This document shows, piece by piece, positions 2,328 through 39,548 of a stretch of 64,000 nt of DNA. The translations under genes and the position numbers were made by a program. Where the stretch lies: the NCBI GenBank assembly GCA_965637545.1, contig OZ281500.1, positions 18,662,001-18,726,000 of the forward strand, read 5' to 3'. Position 1 is the stretch's first letter. Every line of letters begins with the position of its first letter. This DNA is from Phallusia mammillata (Eukaryota). Under the pieces are notes generated by a model. That model did not search any database, was not told the DNA's origin, and was given only the letters and a program-made list of their open reading frames with translations.

Positions 2328-3035
2328 TCATGTCCTTGGTGGCTCTGATTCTTCAGGAATGTTAGGAATGTCAAACGATTGGTCGTAACTTGGCGGTTCA
2401 ACGAGAATCTCATCGTATGCAGGCGGCGGAGGCATCTCAATTCCCGGCAATCCTTGCAGTCTTGCGACCGAGCCAATATTAAGGCTCTCATAAGGTGGTG
2501 CCTCGTCGTCGTAATAACTAATCCCATGAGCGGAGCCGATTGTGTCCGAAACACAGCAGCACCACCCTGGCCATTTGTGTTTCTTTCCACAGAATAGGAA
2601 AGCTACCAGTGTGAGAATAGTAATACATACAAAGGCCACTGCAAAGGTGATTACTAGGGTTCTGTTGTTGTTTGTGAGCGCGACTGTAAGAAAAACTGGC
2701 AGAGTCAAACCCAGCATATACAGCAGAAGGATCCGGAAATTCCGTAGCATTCTACGCCTGGCGTCTAAAAAATAATAAATAGTCTAAAATGTTTGAATGT
2801 GAAACTATAGCAAATAACGGTCCTTAACTTTTATTTACCTTGATATTTTTTTGTAAATTTACAAAAAATTTTCTTTTCAAATCATAGTTAAGGTATTTCA
2901 TTTTATGTGTAGGTTAACACAAACGTTTCTGACTACAGAAGGCCTGATATAAGATGTTATAACTTATCATTTGCTGATTAAAACAAAGAACTCACTTTGT
3001 CTTCGCCTGCGTTCCCGCCTTGTTTCGTTACTCAT
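2328..3035 (-). CDS. Array A gene A1: two-TM membrane protein with Cys cluster and PPxY tail
   Basis: Exons 3035-2996 (MSNETRRERRRRQ, donor GTGAGT, phase 1) and 2764-2328 (acceptor TTTTTAG). A possible further in-frame exon at 3499-3421 would splice into 3043. Two hydrophobic helices, then WCCC, APPY, PPAY, PPSY. Confidence 0.75.
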
Positions 3036-4861
3036 GATCAATGCTTTGTACAAATATGTTTGTGTATTCCTCAAAAAGCTACATTACGCACACACAAAAT
3101 GGATCATAACAAAGCACTGCAAAAATAAAATTCATTTCCAAGCTTTTTGCGTGGCGTATATAGCAATAACGCACTGTACTATTAAAAGTAATTTCATGTT
3201 TTAATAAAAATAAAATGATTTAACTGACAAACACTGCCTTTGCTAAATTAGTGTTCATTCTTTTAAATGTGTGTTTCAGAGATCTGTTGACAAATCTTTT
3301 CTATTGATACAGCACATCTCAAAATGAATTTACAAAGCATTTATTTAGCACAGTAAGTACTGTTTTTTGTACCATGTATCTAAGCGTTTAATCATCTACA
3401 CTAAGCAGAAAAGTACTTACATTCGTCAGCCAAAACAAATCCAGCACTAACGCCGCCAGCTAATATTGTGCCTGAGTGGATCAAATCAACATGAAACATG
3501 ATCTAGCATTCGCATTGTTACCGAACAATCCCTGTTTTGACTCTTTGTCCTGGATTCCAGATAAGAACTGTGCGATTGTTATCTTAGGCTAGACTCGTTG
3601 GCTGGTACTTTCTAGTTTCTAGCTATGCACTGAATTTCAGGTATGTTCTGCCTAACTTGGCCAAGACACGCGAAATTTACAGCTAATCATAAGTGCTTTA
3701 ATGCTAACAATTGGACCACACTGGGCTGACTAACTGACCTGTAGAAATGGATGTTTTGCATGTTCTTAACCTTTCCCCAATTTGTGAATTTGACAACTTT
3801 TTCGCATTTTTAACGCCAGAAGCAAAAGGTTACTTTTAATGTTAACATCCCTGTAACAAATTCTTATTTCAGAAAAGTGAACTTAAAGATAATATTAATA
3901 TTTATTTGTCACAACAGTAGACATATACGGAAGTCACAGGTCGTGGTTATATTGACTCCTGAAACATACATATACAGTAAGTGCAAGAAAAACATACAAT
4001 TGCTATTTGCATATATACGTTGCTGAAATCGATTTGCATAAAAAAGAATAATATAAACAAACACACAAAAACTTTGATGAAGTGTGTTCATCAAAATACT
4101 GGTTTGGCAACAAAACTACATTGGCTATTAAGATGTTTCGAGGTTGTTGTTACTTCTTGAAGCTCTGTTTATATTGAACTTAACCATTATATTAAAAAAA
4201 ATACAATGCATATTAGGGCCACAAAGCCAACTTTGCGAAACTTCAATGCAGATGTTTCAGTAACCGCGCAGCGGAAACACGTAGAAAAAAGTAGTTGCTG
4301 TGTACAGTATGTAAAAAATCATTAGACTTTGTTGTGCACAACTGCACATACAACCCGATTTTCATGACGCAGTTTAGAATCTGTCAATCAAACATTATTA
4401 ACCGGCTTCTTATATTTTAAAAGCAGTGGTGTCCAATGTGCGACGTACGCTTTATGGAACTTGGTTGAACAAAGGCTTTGGCGTATTAAGTTGCATTCGG
4501 TGAAACAATAACTTTTGAAAGTAAGAAGATATATATCGACGAATCTGATTAAACCAAACTTTTCTGTGCGATTGAGCGGACAATTTTTTAAGGCTACGGT
4601 TTTCAATTATACGAGTTTGTCGATTAATCAGTATGCAAGTAAGCGAATTCGTCTCTATGCCACCCCTACATGAGGGGCGTTTGGATTTAGTGGTTATTGC
4701 GTTGGGTATTGGCAAAATGGTCATCAACCACTGCTCTGCCTTTTCTGTATATTCAACACATCAATTTTATAAAGCAAAATTCCAAGGTCTTTTCCTGCAC
4801 CAAGACTCTTTAGTTTATATTTGCATACAAAAGATGCATTCCGCTTTGACTCCTTTGCTAG

Positions 4862-6181
4862 TTAAAGCACCTCTACTCGAAATTCCCCTCCGTCCCCAGC
4901 AGGCGGACTACTGCGTTGCATAGAAGGTGTATATCGTGGCGGTAGATCGTAATATCCCGGTAAACCTTGTTCTCGGGTCTGCCTTCGTACTTCGTCGTAG
5001 CTAGGCGGTGGTGCATTGTTCGCCCCAGACTCCTGCGAGCTTTTGCGACATTGTAAAACGTCCATGCACGACTCGACCAGGCACTTGCCGATTAGGTAAA
5101 TCACATACAGGGGCAGGATGGCGACAATTAAGACGACGATTAATAAATAACAAGGAATAAATAACAGCTGGAAGATTCCGCAGTCTTTTTCTGAAACTAA
5201 AAATAAAAAGGCATGAGCTTATAAGTTACCTAGCTCTTGAGAACGATTCGAGTTCGGACTCGAATTTGCGGCCCGTTACAACTCTGATTTTGCAAAAGCT
5301 TCTACCACCTACAGTGTTCAGTACAGTACGAACTTTCTGTACACACAACATTGCCTGGACAGCGCTTTAATACCTTTTGTCAACGGCATATTTTACCCTG
5401 AACTTAAAATTACGATTTTCTAAAAACCTGAACCGGAGTTGAACCCCATATTTTGTTTGGCGTCTGTTTTATAATTTGTGATTTTTTTTTCAAAACAGTG
5501 AAGAATACGCGAGATGTAGGGCGTGTCAAAAATAACAGTGCACCAGTAAAATTCTTTTGTAGTTTGATAAGGCCAGGTAGATAATGGGTAGAATTAAATT
5601 AAAATAAATAATAATTTGAACCGGTTTAAAAACCGCAAACCGGTTCGGACCGGATAATTTGCCCAAACCGGAACAAAACCCGAACCCGAAAATATACATT
5701 TTTAAAAACCTGAACCGAACCCGAACCCTTAAAAACAAAAACAAGTGAACCCGAACCGAGCCTGAACCCATATGACAAGCGGTTCGACTGCTTGGCTATA
5801 AGTTACCAAATTCAATTTATTGCCGAAAAACTGATGCATTTTGTTCTAGTTCGCAACCGTTGTTTTGCAGTACAGCTTGTTACCTTGTGTAAGGTCACAA
5901 TTAAACCATTGTGGTGAAATAATTACATACCGAATAGTTGCGACTAAAGCACGAGTTAATCAACCCATTTGTTATACGATACAGCCACATGGACGCCATT
6001 TTTGTGCCCCAAAAATTGCAGCGAATATATGAGGCCACGGTGTTAGAGCCCTTATTTTCAATACCAACGGTTTTTTTACGCAAATTAAAAATCAAAGAGG
6101 AAAGTAAACAATATGTGTACAATAGTACACTATTGTTTTACTACGTAAATACACACCATTGCTTTGTCCATCTTCTGCCAT
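4862..6181 (-). CDS. Array A gene A2: Cys-flanked membrane protein with PPxY tail
   Basis: Exon 6181-6157 (MAEDGQSN, 25 nt, phase 1, G|GTGTGT) plus exon 5190-4862 (TTTCAG acceptor): EKDCGIFQLLFIPCYLLIVVLIVAILPLYVIYLIGKC...PPPSYDE...QGLPGYYDLPPRY...RVEVL. The first exon is less certain than the second. Confidence 0.75.
5420..5790. repeat. CCGAACC/AACCG-rich degenerate repeat (probable MITE remnant) in the A2 intron
   Basis: Multiple AACCGAACCCGAACC/AACCGG units. Related CCCGA-rich tracts lie at ~37750-37915 and ~39040-39065. Confidence 0.5.
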
Positions 6182-6672
6182 CTTGCATTCCAACAACACT
6201 TCTTGAAGTTAAAAGCATATGTCTACTCGAACGCATCCCCGCCACCTCATATTACACATGTTAATTTCAAAACCGCTTGTGTGGCTTCTATACACTTTTG
6301 AACAAAAAATACATTAAAGAAGACAAGAAAAATACGTACATACTGTACTGTCGTTTTTGCCATTGTAACCTAGCATTCAAACTTCTCAGCCTCTCATACA
6401 TTCAACAGCTATGAATCTGGACCAGAAATCTATGCCCGATCTCAATCCACATTAAGTTAGAGATTGTTTGCTTAACACACCCCTCTATTTACACTAACAT
6501 AGTGAATAAGGTATATTGGATACCTATGAAGTGACGCACATTTCATATGACTTGCACATTTCATTCCGCGAACTAGTTTCGCTTGGTTCATTAAAATTTA
6601 TACCCTGAAATATTAGACAATTGAAACCGTAGAAGGAACTCTGATATTGAAACTATAAACTTTAATTTATAC

Positions 6673-9166: not shown

Positions 9167-9998
9167 CTAAACATACTGTACTGTTTGCACAGTTGGCACT
9201 GGCTGAACATTTTGCATGGTTTGCATTGGATGAATGGTTTGCATTGGTTGAACAGTTTGCATGGTTTGCAATGGTTGCATGGTTTGCATTGGTTGAATGG
9301 TTTGCATTGGTTGCATGGTTTGTAATGGCTGAACGGTTTGTATGGTTTGTACAGTTTGAACCGGACCACCTCCTGGTTGCACATTAGTTACACCACCTGG
9401 CTCTCCCCTGAAGTACGACCACATTCTAGTGTGTGGAGCAACTGTAGCCTGCTGCTGTTCTTCGTTTTTCTTTTTATTATAGCAGTAGACGATCAACAGA
9501 TAGATGAGGTAGAATGGAATGATCACAAGCACGAGTGCGATTATAAGTAGATAGAACGAGAGTTTCAAAATAAGCCAGATGCACTCGCTGCAATCTGCAA
9601 AATTTATTTAAAAGAAAATTTATTTAAACTATTGTCATTCTAACGAAAGCTTGTTTCAAACCAGTCACCTCACAAGATTGATTACTCATTTTTATGTTGC
9701 TTGATCTATGCAGGATGCTTAGTGTTTCAAACCTGGCTGTTTTTACGAAAAATATTTACAAGTTTTATTTGACAAACCATTCCTGCAAACTTGTGCAAAA
9801 CGAGACAAAACTTTTTCTGATTGGAAAGAGTGTTTGACTTTCTTTAAACTTGTAAACTTACTTTAAAATTGCAGCACGTTTATATATCATTGTGAAAAAA
9901 ACAAAAACATTAATGCTATTGCGATGTAGTTTAATCTTACAAGCTTTGAACTTACCTACGCTATCATCTTCCACAACGTATACGTTGGTTCTGCCCAT
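9167..9998 (-). CDS. Array A gene A3: Cys-flanked membrane protein with xQx tripeptide-repeat tail
   Basis: Exon 9998-9956 (MGRTNVYVVEDDSV, G|GTAAG, phase 1) plus exon 9594-9167 (TTTTGCAG): DCSECIWLILKLSFYLLIIALVLVIIPFYLIYLLIVYC...APHTRMWSYFRG...(VQT/MQP)n VQYV. Confidence 0.85.
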
Positions 9999-10489
9999 TT
10001 TCCTCAGTGTAGTGAATTGCCGCTACTATATATCTACAACTGCAATCAAAAGTCCTTGCTATTTTGACTTCAGCTAGCTTCCCGGTGTCCCTAAGCGACT
10101 GGAATGTCCCATACACCCCATATCTGTTTCACGATTTCAGAGATACTGTTGGCTGTCAGTCTTTTTAAACAAAAGCTGCTTATCGTCCTTGTAACTGATC
10201 CAGCAGAAAGAATCGCTTCTATAACTCCCTATAGGTTTTACTGGTCTTGGGTTACTTCTTTGCCTTCATTTCACTATCTCACAAGTCTGTTTTGGTAAGC
10301 TTATGTTATAAAAACAACTGTTGTAAGATTAGGCTGTTGTACGTTTTTCGCATACTTGTTCTGTTGTTTACAGGGGTGCCAGTGCCTTTGGCACTCGGAA
10401 TTTGCTATACACATTTCAATCATGGTTCAAAAGGAATCGAGTTGATACTTAACTTGCGACAGGACTTATTCCGAATGTTGGTATAATGT

Positions 10490-10845
10490 GCGAAAACATG
10501 TGCAAGTGCCAAAATGTGCGGGTAAGAATGTTCAGACATTTCTCAAAAAAAGTACAAGTGTAAAAATGTGCAATTGCCAAAATGTGCAGTTTAAAATGTT
10601 CACACATTTCTAAAAAAAGCGCACGTTCAAAAATGTGCAAGTGCCAAAATGTGCAGGTCAAAATGGTCACACATTTCTAAAAAAAGTGCCCGTGCCAAAA
10701 TGTGCAATTGCCATAATGTGGAATTGCCAAATTGTGCAGGTCAAAATATTCACACATTCTAAAAAATGTGCACGTACAAAAATTTGCAAGTGTAAAAATG
10801 TACAGGTCAAAATGTTCACACATTTCTCGAAAATGTGCAGGTACA
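10490..10845. repeat. Degenerate tandem repeat (AAAATGTGCA-based units with higher-order ~50-bp structure)
   Basis: Repeated AAAATGTGCAAGTGCC / AAAATGTGCAGGTC / AAAATGTTCACACATTTCT units. Confidence 0.8.
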
Positions 10846-12265
10846 AAATTTTTATTGCTTCATTATTTCCCATTAAATCAAAATCACTGACCAGCTTGGT
10901 CATAATCATCTGATCACTTTGTTGCATTGATTTCAAGTTTACTACCACTTATAGATGCTAGGCACAAAGTGTTGGTACATTTTTTGTCCACATTAGCAGG
11001 CTACGGCTACATAGTATTTTGAAAACAATAATGATGATGGTGATAAATGTTTAGGACTACATATCTAGTTTAAAAACTATTTTCATATTTTAAATCCTGG
11101 ACAAGTTTATGCTTTGCCACATCTAACAAACAAATATGCATTTTCCAAGTTAACGAAATATTTCTTGCACAATTTATAACGACTAAACTAATAAAACATT
11201 TGACATAGCTTGACGTTTAATATCCATGTTTAGCATTTGTTTTTGATATTATGCTAAAAGAAAACAAACAGACATAAAGAGGAACAAATATAATTTATTT
11301 CAAAACCTAATACAATCCTAAAAATATCGCTAATTTTCGATTAAGGGCAAACAGAGCATATTTCAAAGCAAGTTGTGTAAAAATGCTGACGGTTAAGGTG
11401 ATTGGGGTTGAGGTGAGGTTTTATAATAATAATAACAATAAAACCAATGTATAAACTTAGTTCCTTACTTTGAATTTAGTTCGCAAACCCTCACCCAGTC
11501 TCAATGTTAATTTAAATAACTGTGCTCTGTACGCTCTCCATTGAAAATTAGGATTTTTTTTGTGATATGTGTTCTTACGTCCGTAGCTCTACCCAGTTTC
11601 CTCTCTGAACTGTAGGATCTCTTCTAATTTAAAAGGATTTGACTTACAATTAATTAGTTAAAATATGCTGCTCGTATTGAATTTAGTCGTCAATATAAAG
11701 TGGAAATAGAAGTACTGTAGTTTCCCAGAGCCGATGCACGAGCCGCCACCAATCTCGAGATCTGATTGCACCAATACCACTTTACTTAGTCTGCATTTTG
11801 CCACAAAGACATGTTTGTTGTACTTGCTTGCTTGGATTTCCTATTACGTTATCTTTCATACTTTATCTTCTGCTTTTAAAAAAATAAAAAATGCTTTACA
11901 ACATTACACCATTTATTTGTAAACGTGTCGATTATCAAGTTAAACTGTAGACTTCATGCTACCTTTGCATGTTGCACACAGTCGTTGGCAGGGATTAGTT
12001 TACTAACTAACATTGGTGGGTTAAACAAATAATAAAGTTAAACAAGCAATTGGGTATAAAAGTTAAGCAGGTATTGCGCACACATTTCTCAATAGACACA
12101 AATCTACAAATGCACAATTTTTTATGACCAGCCATGTTTCTCTAAATGTATATTAGCACATTTCCAAATCAGCGGAATTGCTCATTGCAATGTTTTTCAT
12201 TAGGATTTAGAAACAATTACTGCATGCAAATATGTACAGATATGTTACAGATATTTGTTTTGATT

Positions 12266-13209
12266 TTAGGACTGTACCCTCCCGACTTGCACCCTCTCAC
12301 TGACTGTCGCCACACCGTCCCGTATTTCAACTCGTTTCTGAACTCTAAAATATTGCACAACTCTTTGGGGCGCGTCCATAACTGACACAGCAGCGGGTGG
12401 TTCTTCTCTAACATTGTCGTCTTCATCGCTACAGCAACATCGCCAGCAGTATCCGAGGAGCTTGAACAGCAAGTACAGCAGGTAGAAGGGGAAAATGGCA
12501 ATAAGAAGGATGCAACATATGCAATCACAAAGGGTCAGTTCTGTACAAGAAAACATTTTAGCAGGCGAACCACAGCTGCAAGCAAGCCCGAAATTTAAAC
12601 CCGAACATAAAATTATGAGCCCAAACCAGTGCCGGGTTGTCAACTAAAAAATTACAACTATCAGTGTCTACTCATTTTAAAGTGGCCTGGATTTTTGACT
12701 GGCCTGTAGGCACGTGCTTACTTTGCCTAATGGTTAATCCAGCACTGGTCCGACCCTACCCGAATCGTTTTGGAAAAGTCCATTTAGGACCGAAAGTTTA
12801 ATTGACAGGCCTCTATAAGACATACACAATCGAAAATGGTGGACAATGGGTTAAACAAGACGTTTTAGGACTGTTGGACGTTATAAATTCAATCCAGCAA
12901 TATTTCCAGCAACTAGCTACGCATCTTGGTGATTTAGATTTGAAAAAATACGGACACAGAACGTCAGGCCCAGATTTAAGCCAGTTTGATACCAAAACGA
13001 AGCGGCACGAACTCGAGTCAATAAGCTCAGACCGACTTACAACTCTGAGGCAAACTATAACCGGAGAATGTAAATGCAACACGTTGTGGTGCAAAATTCA
13101 ACCAGTGTGTGCTGGTTTATAATTTATATGCAACTGTAACGGTTTGCAATTATTCAATCGTAAGTAGTTGTCAATTTTGTTTACCTCTATCTTCATTTCT
13201 GGTCGGCAT
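12266..13209 (-). CDS. Array A gene A4: Cys-rich membrane protein with beta-hairpin tail
   Basis: Exon 13209-13185 (MPTRNEDR, G|GTAAAC) plus exon 12540-12266 (TACAG acceptor): ELTLCDCICCILLIAIFPFYLLYLLFKLLGYCWRCCC...RVVQYFRVQKRVEIRDGVATVSERVQVGRVQS. Confidence 0.85.
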
Positions 13210-15388: not shown

Positions 15389-16811
15389 TTAGGTATGTAC
15401 CCTGATATCCACCCTTTCACTAATAGTCGTCACTCCATCCCTTGTTTTAATGTTTGTCTGTTTTTTGTAGTGGACGACTTGATTTGGTTCTCTTGCAACT
15501 GCGACCAACTTGTTTTCTATGTCTTCGTCATTTTCGTGATCGTCGTGATCTTTACGCAGATAATCCACGCAGAGTCCAAGAAGAATGATTGGCAAAACAA
15601 TGGGATGGAAGACGAAAATAAGTAGGCAAAAAAGCATTTTGTAACAGGTCTTTTCTGCGAAAAAACATGATATGGTAATGCTATTTTTTTCGGGGATAAT
15701 TATGAGGATGTAAATCCGTTTCATAGTTTATTTTGACAATAAATGATTAATAAATCATAAATATTATGCTCGGTCTCGTAAAAACCTTATCAAACGATTG
15801 CTCGTGAAAATAAGACCGCTCGTGCGTTTATCTCAACGCACAGTCCGCGTCGACCCGCCTAAGATGTGTTTTTCAGGTTTTAGCATAAAATTTTAAACCC
15901 GGATTGTCCCAGGGATTTCCGATTCTAGGATTTTTCAAATTAGTCAATCATTTGGTCCCGACGACAATACCCATTTGACCAGGGATCGCCAACCTATAAT
16001 TTATGAACTTTCAGGCATTTGTACAACTCTAAACACTAAATCAAACAACTTTTACAGAATTAGAAAATTAATTTTGGTGAACGTAAATGATCGTGCGTTG
16101 CGGCTCCGATAGAACCACAATTTTTATATTTCTTACAACAAATCCCCGGTCTTCAATTTAAACGGATGTCGACTTGGCATTAAACCAGGGTTACCAAACC
16201 GTTTTCACTCAAGTTCGACTTTTAAAGTAGTCGAACTTTTGAGTTCTACAATTCACACCATTTATTTATTACCAAAGGATAATTTGCATTTTTCGAGCCA
16301 TTTTTTTCGAGTACAAAATAACAATTAACACATTGTGATTCGTGGTGTGAACTTATCGACATATCCCTTCGAATAATTCCCACAATAAATCAATCTATGT
16401 ACAGCGACATTCCACAAAAACGTGTTATAAAAATGGATAAATAAGGTGTTGCCTCCCTTGCGATCGACTTAATATCAGTCCAAAAACGACCACTCTACCT
16501 TAAACAGTTTAAAGTTTTCAACAAAATTCAACCAAAATATTTGTTACTCACTTTTCTGAAAACAAGTTTAGCTGCTACCTTATAGAGTGAAAAAAAGTAG
16601 AAAATATGGGTACATGTTGACAAGTTTTATTTAAATTTTGATGACATTAGTCTTTTGGTTGGTTAGCCTTTACACTTCTCACTTTTATCCGACAAGCTTG
16701 AGCGAAACTTATGATTAGTTTCGGTTTGGTTATGATGTTTGTGAGATTGTACAAATATAGTCCGAGTGTGTTTTTTAACTTCTATTTACCTTCGTCGTCA
16801 ATTGATGACAT
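15389..16811 (-). CDS. Array A gene A5 (divergent beta-hairpin-tail member)
   Basis: Exon 16811-16790 (MSSIDDE, G|GTAAAT) plus exon 15654-15389 (TTTCGCAG): EKTCYKMLFCLLIFVFHPIVLPIILLGLC...QVVHYKKQTNIKTRDGVTTISERVDIRVHT. Confidence 0.8.
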
Positions 16812-18778: not shown

Positions 18779-19661
18779 TCAGGTCTGCACGGTTACGACC
18801 TGTACTCTCTCACTGACCGTCGCCACGCCGTCCCGTATTTCAACTTCCTTTTGGACTCTGAAATAATGCACAACTCGCCGTGGGGCTTCCATAACATTGA
18901 CGACAACGGAAGGTTGTTCTACGTCATTATCTTCGTCATCATCACTATTCCTACAGCAACATCGCCAGCAGCATTGGAGAAGCTTGTATAACAAGTAGAA
19001 TGGAAGAAAAACGAGAAGTAGGGCTCCGATAATAATGCAACACACGCAACCGCACCAGGTCAGTTCTACTAAGAAAAACCAGGTCAGTTACGTTTGAATG
19101 CAGTAATTTGTTAGACTGTTAGGGGATTGTACGGTTGGTGTTCGGTACATTTTTTTACACAGAGATAGGATGTAAAGTGGTTTAGTCATTGCATTAACCC
19201 ATCTCAGTGGTGGATCACTGATGCAATGGCTTTAACATCATAACAGTAAGCGCAGTGCTGTTAATCATTTACCCATTTCGGCCGAATATGTTTCTTACCG
19301 AAGTTTCGGTTTTGGACGAATTTTTAAAAACTTATTTGATAATATGAAATCAATGTCTAAATATTCATAATCTGTCATTTAGTTACAGTAGCTAATTATT
19401 ACAAATTTGCGAACAAAAGTTTTCCGGACGCGTTGTTGGAGGTGTATGTTTTCGCAAGACTTCTTTATGTACAATTACTTGTGAATTTATTCCTAGGCAA
19501 GAAAAACACGTGAATTTCATTTCATTAACATATGCTTTGCGGTCGGCTTGCGTTTAAGCGGAACTTGAAATTTAGTTTCGGTTTTAGAAGATTGTGCAAA
19601 CATTGTCTGGGCGTGTGTTGCAACTTTAGTGTTTACCTTCATCTTCGTCTCTGGACGGCAT
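18779..19661 (-). CDS. Array A gene A6 (close paralog of A4)
   Basis: Exon 19661-19637 (MPSRDEDE) plus exon 19065-18779: ELTWCGCVCCIIIGALLLVFLPFYLLYKLLQCCWRCCC...RVVHYFRVQKEVEIRDGVATVSERVQVVTVQT. Confidence 0.85.
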
Positions 19662-22407: not shown

Positions 22408-22652
22408 TGTTAACTTTATTTCCCAATTAAATTTATTTATTTGGTTTATTTATGCATGACTGATTTCAATGCTTGAGTGATTTTGTACATGTGGCAACTT
22501 GTTTGACCTCACCCTCAGCATGTTTAGTTTAGTAGTTCTTGTGTTGACTTGTGTGAGCAGCTTATGTGAAATACTTGTGTATGTTTCATATTTATGTTTT
22601 TTAATAACTTGTTTATGATTCTATTTGAATAAGATAATAAAATAACTTAGCA
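22408..22652 (+). repeat. 5' LTR
   Basis: TGTTAACTTTATT...AATAACTTAGCA, repeated at 26794-27038. Confidence 0.95.
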
Positions 22653-22653
22653 T

Positions 22654-22669
22654 TGGTAGCAAGAGGATG
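22654..22669 (+). promoter_or_regulatory. Primer-binding site (initiator tRNA-Met)
   Basis: TGGTAGCAAGAGGATG, 1 nt after the LTR. It matches the complement of the metazoan tRNA-iMet 3' end (TGGTAGCAGAGGATGG) with one extra A. Confidence 0.8.
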
Positions 22670-26782: not shown

Positions 26783-26793
26783 CATAATGAGTT

Positions 26794-27038
26794 TGTTAAC
26801 TTTATTTCCCAATTAAATTTATTTATTTGGTTTATTTATGCATGACTGATTTCAATGCTTGAGTGATTTTGTACATGTGGCAACTTGTTTGACCTCACCC
26901 TCAGCATGTTTAGTTTAGTAGTTCTTGTGTTGACTTGTGTGAGCAGCTTATGTGAAATACTTGTGTATGTTTCATATTTATGTTTTTTAATAACTTGTTT
27001 ATGATTCTATTTGAATAAGATAATAAAATAACTTAGCA
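26794..27038 (+). repeat. 3' LTR
   Basis: Copy of 22408-22652 followed by TSD AGTAC (27039-27043); preceded by an A-rich purine tract. Confidence 0.95.
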
Positions 27039-27288: not shown

Positions 27289-28661
27289 CTAAACATACTT
27301 AACTGTTTGCACAGTTTGCGTGGTTTGTACAGCTTGTACCTGACCACTAACTGTCTGCACATTTGTTACTCCAACTTTTTCTCCGCTAAAGTACGAGATT
27401 ACTCGAGTGTGTGGAGCAGCTGTAGTCTGCTTTTGTTCGTCGTTTTTAGTAGTGCAGTAGACGATCAACAGATAGATCAAGTAGAATGGAAGAATTACGA
27501 GCACGAGTGCGATTATAATCAGATAACCCGTAAGTTTCACAAGCAGGCAATGCAATCGCCACAATCTGCAAAAAAAACATGCACTTTAACAAAATTTAGG
27601 TAGACTGGACATTTGACAGAACTATATATTGTTATTGTCAGCGAAGTAATGCGTTAGAACGCTATGTTTGACTTGACATGACTTACATCACTGATAATTA
27701 TTAATCAGCATTTTTTTACTCCATTGCTTAAAATCTATAAACAATAGTCGTTTCGATAAAAACTGTTTGTACTGCTAAAAATCACGAATATAATCCAAAA
27801 TCATTTACAAAAATCACAAAAGTCCAAAGATAGTGTTGGGATTCAGCCAGTTCGCTCCGGTTCTATAGAAACGTCTCACAAAATTTTATGAGATCAGCGA
27901 ACCGGTTAGCATTACTGGTTACTGTCAATGGACTTTTTGTAATAGAACCGACTGAAAAATATGACTTTTGTAATAGAACCGGCTGACAAAAAATTTGAAC
28001 CCCACCACCGCCCTAAGATAGCCTACTATAGTTTTTACCCCGTATGTCTTATCGAAGTGGCGAGAATAGGCATTGGAATATAGCAACGTTGATTACTGGT
28101 TTTAAAGGACTTCAAGCCGAAACAGTGCAATACTTTTCAAACAATTTGTGGAAGTTCAGGTCGCGTTGGTCACGAATTTTTCGGTTAGAAAAGTCAAAAG
28201 ATTCTCTTGCCGCATCAAGTGATCGAAAAGTTATTTAACATAACGTGAATGATAGAAAGTGCCTAAAACTTTTTACATATAAGCTAGGCGAGCTGTAGCT
28301 TCCTTGGTTTGTCAGTATGTTGTGCACACGACGTTTTTTGCAACTTTTGTTGCGTTGAATTTTATTGGAAAACATTATAATGTCCGTCAAGCCAAAAAAT
28401 ACGAATTTAACGCCACACTAAAAAAAACTGTTTTCGAAATTACTTATTTACCAAGTGTGCACATGACGTGTAGTTATCGACTTACTCTTTTGGCAGATTT
28501 TACCGATTCAGTCTGTATTAGGTTTTAGTGGAATGTAATTTAATTTCGGTTTTATTCAAATTCCTGTGAGATTGTGCAAACATAGCCTTGGCGTTGCCAC
28601 TTTTGTGTTTACCTTCATCGTCGTCTTTGTAGTAGTATTTTGTAGTACTATAGTACGGCAT
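27289..28661 (-). pseudogene. Array A copy A7 (paralog of A3/A8), frameshifted
   Basis: Exon 28661-28613 (MPYYSTTKYYYKDDDE, phase 1) spliced to 27565 reads DCGDCIACL*. Exon 2 is 1 nt short relative to A3/A8 near 27550. The downstream frame (LVKLTGYLIIIALV...VKYV) is otherwise intact. Confidence 0.7.
27831..28010. mobile_element. Diverged hAT-type MITE in the A7 intron
   Basis: Ends TAGTGTTGGGATTCA...TGAACCCCACCACCG; degenerate TSD TCCAAAGA/CCCTAAGA. A related terminus begins at ~63973. Confidence 0.55.
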
Positions 28662-32101: not shown

Positions 32102-32943
32102 CTAAACATACTGTACTGTGTGCACGGTTTGTACAGTTTCTACCTGGCCACTGACCGTCTTCACATCTGTTGCTTGCTCTCCTCCCCTAAAGTACAAGAT
32201 AACTCTTGTATGGGGAGCAACTGTAGTCTGCTGTTGTTCGTCGTCCTTAGTGCAGCAGACGATCAACAGATATATCAGGTAGAATGGAAGTATAACAAGC
32301 CCGATTGCGATTATAAGTAGATAACCCGTGAGTTTCAGAAGCATGCACGTGCAATCGACGCAATCTGCGAAAATCATGCATTTTAACAATAATTAGCTAG
32401 GCTGGACATTTGGCAGAACTATATATTGTTATTGTCAGCGTAGTAATGGGTTTGAACGCTATGCTTGCCTTGCCATGCCTTACTTCACTGATGATCAACA
32501 CTCTTGATTTTTTTATTTCTCTTATTTTTAATGAAAGGTTGATTCAAACCGGTAGCCCCAAAAGTGTGCAAATGTTAAAAAATAACCTTGGCGCTTTAAT
32601 GAAGATACATGTAAAATATTACTTAGGTCACAATTCGAACATATCACAAAAACAATGCGAACACCATGAAAGCATCAAGCCAATGTAGGAATTTAACACC
32701 ACACTTGCCAAAGTACATTTTTCGTAATTACTTAATTACCCAAGTGTGGAAATTACGTGGTTTCTATTCATAACGATTTATTCTTTGGGCAGATTTCATC
32801 CATTTAGGCTATCTTAAGTTTAAGTGGAATGTAAATTTAGTTTCGGTTTTATTCAAATTTCAGTGAGATTGTGCAAACATGGTCTTGGTGTTGCTGCTAT
32901 TTTTGTGTTTACCGTCACTGTCGTCGCGGTAGTAGTACGGCAT
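32102..32943 (-). CDS. Array A gene A8 (paralog of A3/A7)
   Basis: Exon 32943-32913 (MPYYYRDDSD) plus exon 32364-32102 (TTTCGCAG): DCVDCTCMLLKLTGYLLIIAIGLVILPFYLIYLLIVCC...APHTRVILYFRG...TVSGQVETVQTVHTVQYV. Confidence 0.85.
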
Positions 32944-34767
32944 TGTAATCTTGTTATTTCGTATTCTTTTCTTGAAGAGAAGATCAAAAACGTATATTTT
33001 GCTGCACGGCTAATTCTTTTGTGATCTGGTGTAAAGAGAGATTAGAATCAAATAACAACAGATTTCAACTAAAAAATTGTGATGTAAAATAACGACGAAA
33101 CTCATCGTGAAACATCAAATTGTAAAAGTTTTACAAACTAACCCAAAACCTGTAAATCTCCCTTTAATCTTTATTTATATAAAGTGGCCATGTTGACAGA
33201 ACATAACCTTTCGAAACGTGAAAGTTTTGGTTACCTACACCAGTAATTCGGCCTTTTTTAACTAGACACTACGTCTCATTCAAACATGATGCAAAAGATT
33301 TGTAAGTGGGGTAAACAATTGTCTAAGTGATTAAATGTCTGTTGTTTACATTGTATTAGCTGTTGCTTATATTTCTGCATTCTTTGATGTTAAAAGTATA
33401 CCTTATATCGGCTAAAACTGTTTTCTTCAATTGTGTAATCTGCACCTCTTGATCTGGACTCCTGCTCTTTTTTGCCCTTACTGCACAGTTAAGCACTGTT
33501 TGGGAAAGCAATTCCTCATTTTTGTCGTATCAATGAGCTAATCAAAGTTAACGTGTAAACTCAGTTTTGCACTCAGTTTATTGGTATTGCATTTGTCGGT
33601 TGGGTTGATAGCAGTTAAAAGCACCAAAGTTTCACTGACACAAAGGGTGACTTTGTTATGTGGTTTGATGGATTGTCGCTCATTTTGCAGACAGTTGTAA
33701 ATTTGTTGTTAAAATCTGGTTGCGCGCTCTATGTACTTAAAGTCAAAAATTCTTCGTTAATGTTTATGGTGTAAAGTTTACTGCCAACTTGCTCTATCTA
33801 TGTTTGTCGAGTGTTTTATTACATTGACACAAAAAACCCGAAAGGTAGGTTCGGCATGGCACCAAAATGTTTGTGAAACAACCAAAAAAAACATACTAAA
33901 TGAAGCAATGGAGAAAATTTTACCGACTTTTACCAACGTGAACAAAACTACCAAATTCTGCACTAAAATTAATCAGGACCCCTTCTTTTAGTATTCTTAG
34001 CCCCTACTACACAGTTAGGCACTGGTCGGTTTGGCTTCCCATTTTTGTCGCATTAGTAGTAAGTGTGCAAACAAAAGTGGCGTTTTAAAGTCTATCTGTA
34101 AACCCAGTTTGACTTTCAGTTTACTTGTATTGCATTCATTAAATTCTGTTAAGAACACAGAAGTTTTACTGACACAAGGGGTTGAACTTTGTGTCGCTCG
34201 TAGGATTGTCGCTCGTTTATTGGCATTGGTTGTATAAGGTAAAATCATAAATAACGTCTGGTAGGTTGGCCTGACTTGTGGCATAAGGAAATGAAATGTT
34301 TCTTGTGTCAAAATTGATTTGATACATATTTAAGCACAAGAGTCATCTATGTGGGTGAATTATCTAGATATTTTAAAGTGGAAATCTTCAAGGCAAGTTT
34401 AGCATTGCACCGAATCACTCATGACAAAAGAATAAATGATGAAACACAATATTTTTTAAGATAAGATGAACATAAATTCATTACTGGGATCAGCCCTGAA
34501 GCGTCTATGCAGACCAGCGATCACGGCACACTCATATATAGAAATCACAGTACGCCAGGCCCATTGACAATATTTTTTATTTACAATAAACTAAACGCAC
34601 GATTTTCTGAGCTGTAAGATCACACAAGTTTGACACGGAAATTCACAATATATTTAAACATAAAGTCATTTTAACATAGAATGTACATAGTGCTTTAAAA
34701 CAAACACAAATTAATCCAAATCTAACAAAAAACACTAAAAAAGCCACAGGATAGTAAGTTCTCTGCT

Positions 34768-35341
34768 CTAACGTTCCACTCGCGTCATTCGGACTCTCTG
34801 GCTCACTGTGGCCACTCCGTTATGTACTTCAACTTCTCGTGATACTGAGAAGAGATGAAGTACCTGGCTTGGAGCGCTAACCACGGATTGAACAGCTGAC
34901 GGTTGCTCAACGTCATCGTCGTCATCATCGTCTCCACACATACAGCGCCAACAACCTTTGAGGATCTGATAGATGAGATAGAATGGACAAAGGACTATGC
35001 CCAATGGGATGCCGATAAAGATACACAAAATCCAGCCGCAACAAGATATCTCTGGTGAAAAATATAACTTAGTATTGTTAATTAGAAACCTTTTATTTAT
35101 CTTTTCGTCTGTGGAGGTAACTGTGATCTTAATTTTTGGTTGTTGCTAGTTTTGTTACGTCTATATTACTGCAAAATGCCAAGCTGATGTATTTAGTGCT
35201 CAACCTCTACAAGCATAATATGGATCTGTTTTTAACAACAATAGCAATAACACAATACATTTGATAGCACTGAAATGGCAATAATCAAAACTCTTCTGTT
35301 ACCAGTGAGCATTTACCTGTATCTTCGTCGGAAGACGGCAT
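34768..35341 (-). CDS. Array A gene A9 (beta-hairpin-tail member)
   Basis: Exon 35341-35317 (MPSSDEDT) plus exon 35051-34768 (TTTCACCAG): EISCCGWILCIFIGIPLGIVLCPFYLIYQILKGCWRCMC...QVLHLFSVSREVEVHNGVATVSQRVRMTRVER. Confidence 0.85.
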
Positions 35342-38035
35342 TTTGCTTTTTAGCTTTTAGGAGTTAGCCAAACCTTGCTTTTAACAAATAAGTTAAACTC
35401 TGCAACTGCAAGTATTGACAATAATTACAATTGCTGCACTGCATAGGCATATTTTATATCAAGGAATTTCGCTGTTGGTTCTTACGTAAAGTAATTTCGT
35501 AATTTCGCTAAAGTCAGTTGCAAACGGTCATTTATGTTCTATGAAGTTTTTACGCTTATTGTCCTCTAAGCCCGTGGCAACGTCCATATCATTTTACTTC
35601 TAGCTTCCAGTGTGTCCATTCCAGGCGACGCTTGAAAGACCTGTTTTACATACAATTTTGAATGGAATTCCATCGCGGCTGCCATGTATTGTTCTAGTTG
35701 TTTACTTTTGTGTTCTTTTCAGGTGATTGAAAGCTCCCCTTGTTGCTATATGGTATCTTTTTGGATTTCATCTAAGCTATAGAACTCATATATACGTTCT
35801 CAGTGCTTTGCATTCATACATATATCGCCTAGGATTACCTCTTATATTTACGAATTTATTTTGATAATCTGTTGCGTGGTAATTAATGGGGTCGCTAGAA
35901 TTTTTTTCGGTGATCGTGGGTGCTGAAAAAACTGACCACATTCGACGACAGTTTTTTTCATATATATTGCTAACAAGCAATGCAAGTAATTTGTTCACCT
36001 TATACTGTCCAAATTACAAATTTGTCTACTAATTACAATTTGGCCTTTCCCAATCGCACAAGCACAAAGAAAAGACCCTCTGACATGGGCAGTGTAGTTA
36101 TTTGTGACACGATCAACCGCTGTAAGGCAAGTTAAGTCAGATACGTACATCCACTTTACTTTTCATTACAAGAAATTCCTGAACTCAAATTACCATGTAA
36201 AACAATTCCACCAGGGGTCGCCAGCTAGTTACCCCCAATGGTTATCATATTTTGTCTTTCGGTATTTCTTTCCATTAACATTTTATCATGACGTCCATTT
36301 AAACTTCCTTTGGATCAACCTACTTTTTTATTCCGTTATACTTTTGTCTCAATGTTTGTCTGCATGAACCAAAGAAGGTTAATGCGACGTTGCATAAAAC
36401 AGGTCTCATGTGTTCCATAGCAGTAAACTAAACGTTGTGTAATCTATACCTCGTTTATCAGTATGTGAGGTTTATTTGGGCAAGTGCATCTTGGTTCAAT
36501 GTTACACCGTACAGACGTGGTAAAATTTTTGGGATTTTGAAGTTTTGCGATAGATATTTGGATTGTGACGTTCCTTTTTCTACATTCGTTTTTTGTTAGC
36601 TTTTCTTCAATTTATATTTCTTGTTCATCACACGTGACAAAAGTTTTACTCTCCAGTTAAGCGAAATAAACTATAACCAAGGGAGATTATTTTCTGATGT
36701 ACTTATTGCTGCGTCCGGAAGCACTGGCGCTCGACAAACGATTTCAATTGCATATACTGACGTATCATACCTGAAACTTTCAGCACACTTTCATTACATC
36801 CACAAAAACTTGCATTATAATACACAGAGTGATTCAAATGTGCTCAAGTTTCCAGGTTTGATGTTTCCATGTTCTTCCCCAAACGTTATGTGTGTATTGG
36901 GTAGAAGTACAAAAGTAAAAAAAAGGTTCCATTCTATTTGGTTGTCAGTTTTATAAATCGTCCTATTGAAAAGCTTGACATATGAGTGTAGTGTTACGGA
37001 GGAACCCTTTGATCGTCTAATGAGGCAGTGAACCTGTTTAAGAGTTCAGATAGATCACGAGGAAATCCCCGCCGGGATAATGTTAAAAGTTTCTGCTCGG
37101 CCGCAACTTCAACAACGCAACCGAAACTAGCATGCTCTTGATTATGTCACAGACTGTTGGCGGTTTTGCGGCAAATGGTTGCCTTCAGACGCGTTCTGCT
37201 ATGCAAGCTGCGTGAAACCATGTTTGCAAAATGTTATGTATGGGTGTTTTTGCGGTGACTGAAGGTATTTTTCTACAAAATTGTTTTTTGGCCCGCTAGT
37301 TCTGTGGCTTCAGCATTGTTGGGGATTTTATTGCTCCTTTCTTTTAACCACGGCTATATTTCATGACAAAAATACTTTTCGAGATACACAACTATTTAAT
37401 AAACGAGTGCAATGAAAGACAATAGTTCTATTTGAAGTGCGTTTTTATTTGTTGTGTTTAGTGCGCAGTTTATAGTAAGTGATGTATAGACAGTTCGTGC
37501 TTGGGCAAAATCAGTTGGTTATAAAGCAAACAAAAAATTAATCTTCTTTTCAACCCTTTTTACAGCGCATAGGGCAAAAATCACCGGTCCATATTTACAT
37601 AAGCCGGGGAAATATATTTGTAAGGGTAAAGGGCATACAAAGATTCACGCTTGGTATATTTAACGAAATGCAATTAATATTTGATAGTGCGGAGTAGTTA
37701 TTTTAAATGTTACTTTTTAACACATAGTTGTCAGTGGGCTTAAAATTGGGGCCTAAACCCGGCCTGAACCAGATTTGTTTGAATCAAAGTTGGTGAAAAT
37801 ACTTCAAAAATGATCCCGGGTGCAAAGTCAGGCCCGAGTTAATGCCATTTCATTGAACTCAGCCTGAACCTGGCAGGAACCCGACCAAAAAAGCCCGGCC
37901 CGACTTACAACTCTGTTGCAGCAGTAATTTGACGCGTAAGTTCAAGCTTGGGTAGTTTTTTGTCTCGTTCGACCAGGCGTGAAGTTGACCTAGTTTCTCA
38001 TGTACGTTCATGTGCCACCTAAGTGTCTGCACGTG

Positions 38036-39548
38036 TCACTTTTCAACCGCTTTAAATTGAATCCGTTCACTGACAGTTGCAACCCTTGAACGAGAATTTT
38101 TTTCCTTTTGCGCATTTCCTGTTGCATTCTTTTTCGGTGATTCAGGTGTTGATGGCCGTGATGATAAAGGTTGCTGGTTTGCGTATAGTTCTTCGGTTGG
38201 CTCCGCTGGAATTTTCGTCGGTGCTGTTGACGAAGATGACCCGACAATTGGTGAACTTTGTTCTGGTAGTGGCGTGGTTTGATTTTGGCGATTGTCTGGC
38301 TTTGCTTTCGATGATTTAGATGGCTCTTCTAATTGTAATGACAAAGTCTTTGGTTCTATAGGTGGTGATTCTGGTTCTGATAGTTGGTCGGATGCCTCTG
38401 GCGATGAAATGCCTGCTTCTTGTTGTGGGGTCGATGTTTCGGGTGGTGGTATATCGTAGTGATGTTCTCCCGTTGATGCTTCTTTAGATGGTGATTCTGG
38501 TTCTGATGGTGACACGCCTGCCTCTGATGTTGGAATCTCAGGCTCCTCTTGTAGAGATGAAGTATCTGATGGTGGTGTTGGTGGTGGTAAATCGTATGGT
38601 TGCTCTGGCGTTGATGGTTCGTTGGATCGTTTTGATAGTTTAGCCACCAAACGTGGTGTTCTTGTTGTTGATAGCTGTGGCGATGGCGTTGGTAGAAAAC
38701 CTGGTGTATGGCGTCTTAGTGATGATGTCGATGGTGCACTGGACGTTTGCTGACGGGTCGCAGGTGTGTTTCTTGTTCCATCTACAACGACGCTGTCCAA
38801 AGGTGGTTGTTGTGTTCTTGGAGGTTCAATCTCCTCTTCTGCTTCGCAGCAGCATTGGGCGATCTTGTACAATATCACAAGGGGTAATGCAACCAAACAG
38901 CAAAGTGTCATGCAGATGCATTTCAGCGTTTCTCGGTCGCCTTTAAAATAAAACAACAATTTAGTTGTCACGAAAAGAACTAAATAACTAGGCATTATCT
39001 TATTTTTGAACATAATTGTCAGCGCGTTAATATTACTAGCCCGAAACCCGGCCCGAACCCGACCGTTTAGTCCGTTTGCTAAGAAAGTTTTCCGAAAAAA
39101 ATGTAATTCAAAATGAATGTTTTTTTTTCTTTATAAAATCGTCGCTGGAACCAGACCTAAACAGCTGGGCCTGACTCACTATATCTATACTTTACATAGA
39201 AAATATTAAAATTTGACATTCCAATGCTCGGATTTAACTTGACATTAGCTGTGTTAAGCAAGACCATTAAACATCGTTCTGACCCTATGCACTACTGCGG
39301 TTGCGAACAAATTTACCCACCCTCTTAAATGTGAAATTTCAATGAAACGTTCCGCCTAAATTGCTTTTGAGCAAAAAGGTCTACTGTGAGCGTAAACCGT
39401 GTAGTCATGCCCATAGAGAACGGTAGCGAAACAAACAACTACAATGTTTACGAGCAGATATCTCGCTTTAATTAAAATTTAAAGTGTCGGTCTTGCTTTC
39501 TTGAACACAATAAAATCAATAAACTTTACCTCGTCCACGAGCGCACAT
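38036..39548 (-). CDS. Array A gene A10: membrane protein with a long Pro/Glu/Ser/Thr-rich tail and Tyr motifs
   Basis: Exon 39548-39530 (MCARGR, G|GTAAAG) plus exon 38940-38036: GDRETLKCICMTLCCLVALPLVILYKIAQCCC...YDLPPP...YDIPPP...EELYAN...RVATVSERIQFKAVEK. Confidence 0.8.

What the first reader, a model, noticed from the sequence alone, without database searches (positions are those of the whole stretch)
2328..39548. Unrecognised 10-copy tandem array of small Cys-flanked membrane proteins with interchangeable cytoplasmic tails
Seen: ten co-oriented minus-strand loci, every few kb, each with a tiny first exon, a phase-1 intron and one exon carrying the membrane segment and tail. A2-A10 share a ~25-35 aa hydrophobic segment with a Pro-centred core (LPLYVIY, IPFYLIY, FPFYLLY, LPFYLLY, CPFYLIY, LPLVILY; divergent in A5) flanked by Cys residues. 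A1 is linked through its tail. The tails fall into four classes: PPxY (A1, A2), beta-hairpin (A4, A5, A6, A9), xQx repeat (A3, A7, A8) and PEST/Tyr (A10). I recognise no named family. Inference: a birth-and-death family of lipid-anchored membrane adaptors with a shared anchor and diversified signalling or assembly tails. Such patterns are common in immune, recognition or tissue-specific effector loci. This is the best candidate for an undescribed system in the window.
Basis: partly seen in the sequence, partly recalled or inferred. Interest (0 to 1): 0.85.

Follow-up and report, generated by a model that had tools for sequence, protein, structure and literature searches.

The report
Sea-squirt-only family of tiny membrane proteins
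A row of nine related two-exon genes (plus one loosely linked neighbour) in a sea-squirt genome encodes small single-pass membrane proteins that match no named family; the genes are real, but their function is still a guess.

Summary

**What holds up**
- A3 to A9 are clearly one family (profile E 1e-25 to 1e-48). A2 and A10 join it at modest significance. A1 is tied in only by a weak PPxY-tail resemblance to A2.
- The model of a tiny first exon, a phase-1 intron and a second exon is proven by spliced RNA contigs for A10.
- For A3 to A9 the model is supported by conserved first exons and donor sites. One homologue from another organism has the same structure.
- Selection is purifying (dN/dS 0.17 to 0.44).

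- A7 carries a 1-base deletion that breaks the frame, so it is probably a pseudogene.
- The tails are not four unrelated interchangeable classes. The hairpin, xQx and A10 tails share one C-terminal module.
- Membrane orientation is unresolved, because flanking charges conflict between copies. "Cytoplasmic tail" is therefore an inference.
- RNA evidence exists only for A10. A9 had no RNA cover in the same runs.

**Family and function**
No named family fits. Pfam, the PDB and the ESM Atlas gave nothing, and 1.84 billion representative proteins gave one unnamed hit. The best reading is a lineage-restricted family of Cys-flanked, probably S-acylated, membrane-anchored scaffold proteins. No immune or recognition role is shown. 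Interest is moderate.

The parts
2328..2764 (-). A1: main exon, ORF 2328-2750 with a possible acceptor at 2764. It has two hydrophobic segments, a CCC cluster and a tail with two PPxY motifs. It is only weakly linked to the family.
   Evidence: No hit to the family profile. Tail similarity to A2: E 0.004, shuffle p 0.007. The first exon, or a start at the internal ATG at 2750, is unresolved.
4862..5190 (-). A2: main exon. TM core LPLYVIY, flanking Cys, and PPSY and PPRY motifs. It ends ...EFRVEVL, possibly a truncated start of the family's C-terminal module.
   Evidence: Family profile E 1.3e-6 and 6.7e-4. The first exon is not established; the best candidate is 6142-6181.
9167..9594 (-). A3 exon 2: TM core IPFYLIY and a tail with an expanded (T/P)(V/M)Q repeat. 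The predicted protein is 156 aa.
9956..9998 (-). A3 exon 1 (14 codons ending ...EDDSV, plus 1 base), with donor G|GTAAGT, phase 1.
   Evidence: Total CDS is 471 nt, a multiple of 3.
12266..12540 (-). A4 exon 2: TM core FPFYLLY, a CWRCCC cluster, an acidic run and the C-terminal hairpin module. Predicted protein 99 aa.
   Evidence: dN/dS against A6 is 0.17.
13185..13209 (-). A4 exon 1 (MPTRNEDR plus 1 base), phase-1 donor.
15389..15654 (-). A5 exon 2: divergent TM core (HPIVLPI), an acidic/His run and the hairpin module. Predicted protein 95 aa.
16790..16811 (-). A5 exon 1 (MSSIDDE plus 1 base), phase-1 donor G|GTAAAT.
18779..19065 (-). A6 exon 2: TM core LPFYLLY, a CCWRCCC cluster, an acidic run and the hairpin module. 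Predicted protein 103 aa.
   Evidence: AlphaFold2: helix at residues 2-38, disordered 42-67, low-confidence beta hairpin at 64-93.
19637..19661 (-). A6 exon 1 (MPSRDEDE plus 1 base), phase-1 donor.
   Evidence: The region around it is 70% identical over 264 nt to the A8 exon-1 region.
27289..27565 (-). A7 exon 2: an A8-like copy with a 1-nt deletion just after the acceptor. The in-phase reading stops after 9 codons, so it is a probable pseudogene.
   Evidence: CDS 326 nt, remainder 2 on division by 3. dN/dS against A8 is 0.44.
28613..28661 (-). A7 exon 1 (16 codons, Tyr-rich then KDDDE, plus 1 base), with an intact phase-1 donor.
32102..32364 (-). A8 exon 2: TM core LPFYLIY and a TVQ-type tail. 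Predicted protein 97 aa.
32913..32943 (-). A8 exon 1 (MPYYYRDDSD plus 1 base), phase-1 donor.
34768..35051 (-). A9 exon 2: TM core CPFYLIY, a CWRCMC cluster, a poly-Asp run and the hairpin module. Predicted protein 102 aa. No RNA contig covered it in the four runs laid.
   Evidence: Contig depth was zero over 34694-36269 in all four runs, so over all of A9.
35317..35341 (-). A9 exon 1 (MPSSDEDT plus 1 base), phase-1 donor.
37425..38940 (-). A10 exon 2: CDS 38036-38940 plus about 0.6 kb of 3' UTR. It has TM core LPLVILY, a CCC cluster and a roughly 270-aa Pro/Ser/Thr/Glu-rich tail. The tail carries two YDxP motifs and one YxN motif and ends with the family's ...VATVSERIQ... motif.
   Evidence: RNA contigs of 1.5-1.65 kb in runs X1-X3 with no mismatches. 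Family profile E 8e-5 and 5.5e-6. Tail-only profile hits the extreme C-terminus at E 0.008.
39530..39691 (-). A10 exon 1: 5' UTR plus ATG at 39548, coding MCARGR plus 1 base. The intron 38941-39529 is GT..AG on the minus strand, phase 1. Predicted protein 307 aa.
   Evidence: Joint seen in 3 runs. Sequence read directly..

Best explanation
This is a genuine, lineage-restricted (ascidian) family of two-exon genes that grew by tandem duplication.

Each intact copy encodes a 95-156-aa protein (307 aa for A10) with these parts, in order:
- A tiny, mostly acidic N-terminus. It is coded by exon 1, which ends in phase 1.
- One very hydrophobic signal-anchor helix, with Cys residues at both borders and a conserved Pro-aromatic core (L-P-F-Y-L-I-Y) near one end.
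- A Cys cluster right after the helix, such as CCWRCCC.
- An acidic linker.
- A C-terminal amphipathic module of about 35 aa, predicted at low confidence to be a beta hairpin.

Shown: the genes exist, they are related to each other, at least A10 is transcribed and spliced as modelled, and the coding sequence is under purifying selection.

Inferred (about 55-60% for orientation, about 30% for the full mechanism):
- The N-terminus faces outside and the tail faces the cytosol.
- The juxtamembrane Cys residues are S-acylated.
- The proteins act as small membrane-anchored scaffolds whose tails present short docking elements. These would be PPxY for NEDD4-type WW-domain ligases in A2 (and A1), YDxP/YxN phosphotyrosine and proline sites in A10, and the shared hairpin for self- or partner-association in A4, A5, A6, A9 and A10.
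- The xQx tails of A3, A7 and A8 are a degenerate, repeat-expanded form of the same module.
For: Family and gene model:
- Profile scores and alignment.
- Conserved exon 1 ends ...(D/E)(D/E)x, with G|GTAAA donors in phase 1, in A3-A10. CDS lengths are multiples of 3 in 7 of the 8 copies with a known exon 1.
- The A10 splice is seen in three RNA runs, plus exon-2 contigs in a fourth run from another study.
- P0001/L001 is the single homologue among 1.84 billion representative proteins (E 1e-17). It comes from a contig with no DNA match in this genome. It has the same MPxxxxDx exon 1, a phase-1 intron and the same exon-2 layout. It is 53% identical to A9 and A6, with saturated dS.

Selection:
- dN/dS is 0.17 for A4-A6 and 0.37-0.44 within A3/A7/A8.
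- Only the exons of A4 and A6 remain alignable; their flanks have diverged beyond detection.

Architecture:
- AlphaFold2 gives a helix at 2-38 (pLDDT 81-87), a disordered linker and a hairpin at 64-93.
- Motif and Cys counts.

Tail homology:
- Shuffle tests and the tail-only profile.

Comparison class:
- The short ectodomain, single TM, juxtamembrane Cys and motif-bearing tail match the published definition of transmembrane adaptor proteins (PMC3342071, read).
Against: - Orientation is not settled. The charge difference across the helix favours N-out for A6 (+5), A3 (+3) and A9 (+2). It is neutral for A4 and A8. It favours the opposite for A5 (-5) and A10 (-7).
- No acylation, localisation or binding data exist.
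- RNA support exists for A10 only. A9 had no contig cover in the same runs, and the word share of about 0.20 of the 7.7-kb query is explained by A10 alone, so A8 is probably absent from those runs too.
- The hairpin has pLDDT of only about 50-57.
- A3-A9 carry hardly any Tyr or Pro docking motifs, so the 'adaptor' reading rests mainly on A1, A2 and A10, which are the most weakly linked members.
Confidence: 0.5

Rival explanations
1. Same family, opposite orientation (type II). The short N-terminus is cytosolic. The acidic linker, the hairpin and the Pro/Ser/Thr-rich A10 tail (read as mucin-like) face the lumen or the cell surface. The proteins would then be surface or granule-membrane components rather than cytosolic adaptors.
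For: - Flank charges of A10 (N +3, C -4) and A5 (N -1, C -6) fit N-in, C-out.
- Every copy has a strongly acidic run soon after the helix.
- The A10 tail is rich in Ser, Thr and Pro and has two N-x-T sequons (read).
Against: - A6, A3, A9 and the foreign homologue have acidic N-flanks and basic residues right after the helix.
- Very long hydrophobic helices behind a short acidic N-terminus usually translocate the N-terminus (general knowledge of signal-anchor topology).
- Vicinal Cys clusters such as CCWRCCC are typical of cytosolic S-acylation sites.
- PPxY motifs in A1 and A2 only make sense in the cytosol.
Confidence: 0.22
2. The functional part is the conserved transmembrane helix. The proteins would be small regulatory subunits that dock in the membrane onto a pump, channel or receptor, working like FXYD proteins or the phospholamban-type 'regulins'. 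The tails would only tune this.
For: The helix is the best-conserved region between the two subfamilies: 47% identity, against 16% for the linker and 31% for the hairpin. Its Pro-aromatic core is the only feature shared by A2 through A10.
Against: - No Pfam match to FXYD or any regulin family.
- The P-F-Y lies inside the hydrophobic segment, not outside it as in the FXYD signature.
- The C-terminal module is also conserved across species, which argues that the tail matters.
Confidence: 0.15
3. Highly diverged members of a named small-membrane-protein family (TMEM52, Shisa/WBP1/VOPP1-like, CYSTM).
For: - The Pfam TMEM52 model matches the TM plus Cys cluster of 3 of 8 members below threshold. 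The best E is 0.012 for the longer A6 ORF and 0.067 for exon 2 alone.
- A neighbouring PPxY ORF in the left flank touches WBP-1 at E 0.081.
Against: - All these scores are far under the gathering cut-offs (13.6-16 bits against 26.4).
- The genome's best TMEM52-like stretches lie elsewhere and are themselves weak.
- No Shisa, CYSTM, caveolin or WBP-1 hit for any of the ten at E <= 1.
- The exhaustive profile search found no named protein.
Confidence: 0.05
4. Non-functional sequence: chance ORFs, a decayed pseudogene array or transposon-derived fragments.
For: - A7 is frameshifted.
- No RNA cover for A9 in four runs.
- The A7/A8 exons are hardly better conserved than their flanks: 79% against 72-80%.
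Against: - A10 is transcribed and spliced.
- Eight of nine family exon-2 frames are open.
- dN/dS is 0.17 for A4-A6, with flanks diverged beyond alignment.
- The exon-intron structure is conserved in a different organism.
- The family occurs only at this locus, not dispersed like a repeat.
Confidence: 0.03

Closest known systems
Transmembrane adaptor proteins (LAT, NTAL, PAG/Cbp, LIME), a functional class of vertebrate leukocyte scaffolds
   Same: An ectodomain of only a few residues, one TM helix, Cys residues directly after the helix, and a long enzyme-free tail carrying docking motifs. A10 has two YDxP motifs, one YxN motif and many proline sites (class definition from PMC3342071).
   Different: - No sequence relationship.
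- A3-A9 have almost no Tyr motifs and instead carry an acidic run plus a beta-hairpin-like module.
- Cys clusters sit on both sides of the helix and are much denser than CxxC.
- Orientation is unproven, and the charge rule disfavours it for A10.
PPxY-bearing membrane adaptors of NEDD4-family ubiquitin ligases (NDFIP1/2, PMEPA1, WBP1/VOPP1, Shisa tails)
   Same: A1 and A2 are small membrane proteins with two PPxY motifs each, spaced about 10-20 residues apart, in the presumed cytosolic tail. A further such ORF lies just left of the window.
   Different: - No Pfam hit to WBP-1, Shisa or NDFIP models at E <= 1.
- No Cys-rich ectodomain.
- NDFIPs have three helices with the motifs at the N-terminus.
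- Most members of this family (A3-A10) have no PPxY at all.
TMEM52 (Pfam PF14979), an uncharacterised vertebrate single-pass protein family
   Same: A TM helix followed by a ...C(W/F)RCCC-type cluster gives weak Pfam alignments for 3 of 8 members.
   Different: Scores of 13.6-16 bits against a cut-off of 26.4. Only about 40 residues of helix and Cys cluster align. Nothing in the tail matches.
FXYD / phospholemman family of Na,K-ATPase regulators
   Same: Small single-pass proteins with a P-F-x-Y-type signature, juxtamembrane Cys (acylated in phospholemman, from general knowledge) and tandemly arranged paralogues.
   Different: Here the P-F-Y sits inside the hydrophobic helix, not in the ectodomain. 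There is no signal peptide and no Pfam match.

Membership tests
Transmembrane adaptor proteins (functional class, not a homology family) | Very short extracellular part and a single TM helix | tested here: met
   About 10-25 residues come before one hydrophobic segment of 18-29 aa in A3-A10. AlphaFold2 gives a helix at 2-38 in A6.
Transmembrane adaptor proteins (functional class, not a homology family) | Juxtamembrane Cys motif (CxxC) on the cytosolic side that is palmitoylated | tested here: inconclusive
   Cys clusters follow the helix in all copies. Neither the side of the membrane nor acylation could be tested.
Transmembrane adaptor proteins (functional class, not a homology family) | Several Tyr-based SH2-docking motifs in the tail, phosphorylated by Src/Syk kinases | tested here: inconclusive
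   A10 has two YDxP and one YxN. A3-A9 have none of these motifs. Phosphorylation is not testable here.
NEDD4-ligase membrane adaptors (PPxY class) | PPxY motifs in a cytosolic segment that bind WW domains | tested here: inconclusive
   Two PPxY each in A1 and A2, and none in A3-A10. Binding and topology are not testable with these tools.
TMEM52 (PF14979) | Score above Pfam's gathering cut-off (26.4 bits) | tested here: not met
   Best score 16.1 bits at E 0.012. In one search, 3 of 8 members matched with best E 0.067. The own-genome scan puts no hit in the window.
   None listed for any of the ten ORFs, nor for 8 members at E <= 10.
FXYD (PF02038) | Pfam match, with the P-F-x-Y-D signature lying outside the membrane before the helix | tested here: not met
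   No Pfam match. The P-F-Y lies within the hydrophobic segment, near its C-terminal end.
RHIM / amyloid signalling motifs | Pfam RHIM match, or a conserved (I/V)-Q-(I/V)-G core tetrad | tested here: not met
   No RHIM hit among the families listed at E <= 10. VQVG occurs only in A4; the other copies have VQVV, VRMT, VDI and IQFK.

The most novel reading that the evidence does not exclude
The conserved C-terminal module could be a membrane-tethered self-templating assembly motif. The module consists of two amphipathic strands that both carry an R-V-Q core, and it has expanded into long V/T/M-Q-x repeats in A3, A7 and A8. On this reading the family would be a chordate analogue of the amyloid-like signalling adaptors: RHIM proteins, and fungal HET-s-type motifs linked to membrane-targeting domains. 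Such an adaptor would switch a membrane protein on by higher-order polymerisation. Nothing here excludes this reading, but nothing tests it either.
Probability: 0.05. Interest if true: 0.8.

Novelty: new variant of a known kind. Interest (0 to 1): 0.36.

Why it matters
If the reading holds, ascidians carry a private, locally expanding family of Cys-anchored membrane scaffolds that gene catalogues miss. The exons are tiny, and 15 billion catalogued proteins contain only one unnamed relative.

The family is a compact natural series. One anchor is combined with tails that range from a 35-residue hairpin to PPxY tags, Q-rich repeats and a 270-residue phospho-site-rich arm. That makes it useful for asking how new membrane adaptors arise and diversify in the sister group of vertebrates.

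On its own it is an orphan family of unknown function, which is of moderate rather than high interest.

Tried and rejected
**Homology searches**
- Word-based homologue searches with A6 exon 2 and with A1 found nothing. A search with the 8-row family alignment returned only P0001.
- The exhaustive profile search returned one hit, P0001.
- ESM Atlas by features gave no usable hit.
- Pfam on all ten ORFs, on 8 aligned members and on flank ORFs gave only sub-threshold noise.
- A PDB profile search gave nothing below E 0.35.

**Searches of this genome**
- Searches with A1, A2 and A10 hit only themselves.
- The family profile hits only the seven window loci.
- A TMEM52 family scan of the genome gave weak hits elsewhere and none in the window.

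**Structure and binding**
- Complex prediction on an A6 homodimer returned 'no answer' (score 0.02). This is not evidence for or against self-association.

**Other look-ups**
- An exact-sequence look-up of the A1 ORF in public assemblies found no record.
- Searching papers for the run accession DRR090687 gave 0 papers. A search for ascidian transmembrane adaptors listed 12 of 111 papers holding at least two of the three terms. No listed title concerned such a family, and I used one review only for the class definition.
- A shared upstream motif (ACCAGANCNCAA) has four exact matches, three of them upstream of A4, A6 and A8. I derived the pattern from those same sequences, so I do not count it as evidence.

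**Limits on the RNA and spliced-protein work**
- The tail-only profile does not reach A3, A7, A8 or A2 on its own. Their tail homology rests on the collinear alignment and the shuffle tests.
- RNA evidence for A1-A9 could not be obtained, because the single run search and the single read-laying run went on the A8-A10 and A9-A10 stretches.
All searches used exon 2 by reference, and exon 1 peptides were only read and counted.


Full report
**Setting.** The window is animal DNA: G000 contig 7, from a 240-Mb assembly. Earlier notes of this scan call the animal a sea squirt, and one names Phallusia mammillata. I did not verify the species. GC content is 33-41% throughout.

**The observation.**
- The quoted hydrophobic cores are exact, and Cys residues flank the hydrophobic segment on both sides.
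- A profile built from A3-A9 (alignment A3) scores those seven at E 1e-25 to 1e-48 among the 707 open frames of the window. It scores A2 at 1.3e-6 and A10 at 8e-5, and the next best frame at 0.26.
- After adding the foreign homologue, A10 improves to 5.5e-6 and A2 is 6.7e-4 among 2,876 frames.
- A1 never hits. Its only tie is a PPxY-tail resemblance to A2 (BLASTP E 0.004-0.006; shuffle p 0.007).
- The family profile finds no copy elsewhere in the 240-Mb genome. No relics were found between the loci.

**Gene structure.**
- Their first exons code MPTRNEDR, MPSRDEDE and MPSSDEDT, which are clearly one conserved exon.
- I found matching first exons for A3, A5 and A8 and for A7.
- Seven of the eight copies with a known exon 1 have a CDS length that is a multiple of three. 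They give proteins of 95-156 aa, and 307 aa for A10.
- A7 is the exception. Compared with A3 and A8 it lacks one base just after the acceptor. The in-phase reading is CGDCIACL followed by a stop. It is probably a recent pseudogene, unless the base is an assembly error.
- First exons of A1 and A2 remain unresolved. A1 may simply start at its internal ATG.

- Laid on 34300-40200, three runs each have one contig of 1.5-1.65 kb that covers 37425-38940. It then skips 589 bases with GT..AG ends on the minus strand and continues at 39530-39691, with zero mismatches.
- A fourth run, from another study, covers parts of exon 2.
- Read directly, exon 1 codes MCARGR plus one base.
- In the same runs A9 has zero cover. 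The word share is explained by A10 alone, so A8 and A9 are not visibly expressed in those samples. That does not show they are silent.

**Conservation.**
- dN/dS (NG86) is 0.17 for A4-A6 (dS 1.1) and 0.37-0.44 within A3/A7/A8 (dS 0.5-0.65). Older pairs are saturated.
- Self-comparison shows that only the exon of A4 and A6 is still alignable. A7 and A8 share a 2.4-kb unit at 71-80% identity.
- The exhaustive profile search of 1.84 billion representative proteins gave a single hit, P0001 (E 1e-17). It is an unnamed singleton from a 1.6-kb Logan contig of run DRR090687.
- That contig has no DNA match in this genome, so it comes from another organism.
- It carries ATG-coded MPASENDS plus G|GTAAAA, an intron of about 240 bases, an AG acceptor and an exon 2 with the same layout. 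It is 53% identical to A9 and A6, with saturated dS.
- The family and its exon structure are therefore older than this species and under constraint.

**The tails.** The alignment shows a collinear frame across the hairpin and xQx classes: AP..RV..YF(R)...V.TVS..V.
- Shuffle tests on tails alone give p 0.003 (A6-A7), 0.005 (A6-A8) and <= 0.0003 (A6-A10).
- A profile of the hairpin alone picks the extreme C-terminus of A10 as the best non-member hit (...VATVSERIQ..., E 0.008).
- So three classes are one diverging module. It was repeat-expanded in A3 and pushed apart by about 270 inserted residues in A10. Only the PPxY tails of A1 and A2 stand apart, and A2 ends in ...EFRVEVL, possibly the truncated start of the module.

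**Architecture and orientation.**
- AlphaFold2 on A6 exon 2 with 8 sequences gives a helix at 2-38 (pLDDT 81-87), a disordered acidic linker and a two-stranded hairpin at 64-93 at low confidence (pLDDT about 50-57).
- The charge difference across the helix, including the exon 1 residues, is inconsistent. It favours N-out, C-in for A6 (+5), A3 (+3) and A9 (+2). It is neutral for A4 and A8. It favours the opposite for A5 (-5) and A10 (-7).
- I lean to cytosolic tails, at about 55-60%. The reasons are the dense vicinal Cys clusters, the PPxY motifs and the long hydrophobic helices behind short acidic N-termini. This remains an inference.

**What it is.** No named family fits.
- Pfam gives nothing over threshold. 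TMEM52 touches the helix plus Cys cluster of three members at 13.6-16 bits against a cut-off of 26.4, and the genome's own TMEM52-like stretches lie elsewhere.
- Shisa, WBP-1, CYSTM, caveolin, FXYD and RHIM do not appear.
- The PDB and the ESM Atlas give nothing.
- By layout, the closest known things are the transmembrane adaptor proteins: short ectodomain, one helix, juxtamembrane Cys and a motif-bearing tail (PMC3342071). For A1 and A2, the closest are the PPxY membrane adaptors of NEDD4-type ligases. These are resemblances of design, not membership.

**Mechanism, committed.** The most likely reading is Cys-anchored, probably S-acylated, bitopic scaffolds whose tails dock cytosolic partners, with the shared hairpin acting as an association module.
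- About 0.85 that it is a real, constrained and unnamed gene family.
- About 0.3 for the adaptor mechanism as stated.
- The rivals are a type II orientation with exposed tails, a helix-centred regulatory subunit of a membrane transporter, a very distant member of a named family, and non-function.
- A homodimer prediction returned no verdict and is not used.

All searches used exon 2 by reference.

**Verdict.** The tail-swapping, lipid-anchor and immune ideas are unproven or corrected. Interest is moderate.

Noticed in passing
window 22408-27038 (+): An intact Ty1/copia-type LTR retrotransposon sits between A6 and A7. It has a 1,371-aa open frame with integrase placed before an RVT_2 reverse transcriptase, flanked by 245-bp LTRs that are 100% identical. 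That points to a very recent insertion. I describe it only.
   Followed up: partly
L003:9220-9645 (-), about 0.4-0.8 kb left of the window start: Another minus-strand open frame codes a small membrane protein with two hydrophobic segments and two PPSY motifs. It resembles the A1 tail weakly (BLASTP E 0.002). The PPxY sub-cluster may therefore extend beyond the window.
   Followed up: partly
L003:4101-4439 (-), about 5.6 kb left of the window start: A minus-strand open frame with two hydrophobic segments, a CWRSC cluster and a C-terminal ...ELTTV (a PDZ-ligand-like end). It hits the family profile only weakly (E 0.0055) and has no Pfam family over its cut-off.
   Followed up: partly
window 34300-34700 and 39620-40200: Many short RNA contigs pile up here at high depth, with mismatches and loose ends. 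This looks like a dispersed repeat transcribed from elsewhere. The 5' UTR of A10 runs into one of these stretches.
   Followed up: no
window 10449-10948: An internally repeated stretch: self-matches offset by about 68 and 135 bases at 77-79% identity. It gives His/Phe/Cys-rich open frames on both strands between A3 and A4.
   Followed up: no
window 46909-59615: The scan's own notes list a second tandem array here, of Gly-rich two-TM microproteins. Together with the ORFs in the left flank, this chromosome region seems generally rich in genes for very small membrane proteins.
   Followed up: no
window 19552-19791 vs 32818-33078: The promoter and exon 1 regions of A6 and A8, which belong to different subfamilies, are still 70% identical over 264 bases although exon 1 is only 25-31 bases long. 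The motif ACCAGANCNCAA lies 24-87 bases upstream of the ATG of A4, A6 and A8. This may be shared regulation, but I derived the motif from these same sequences.
   Followed up: partly
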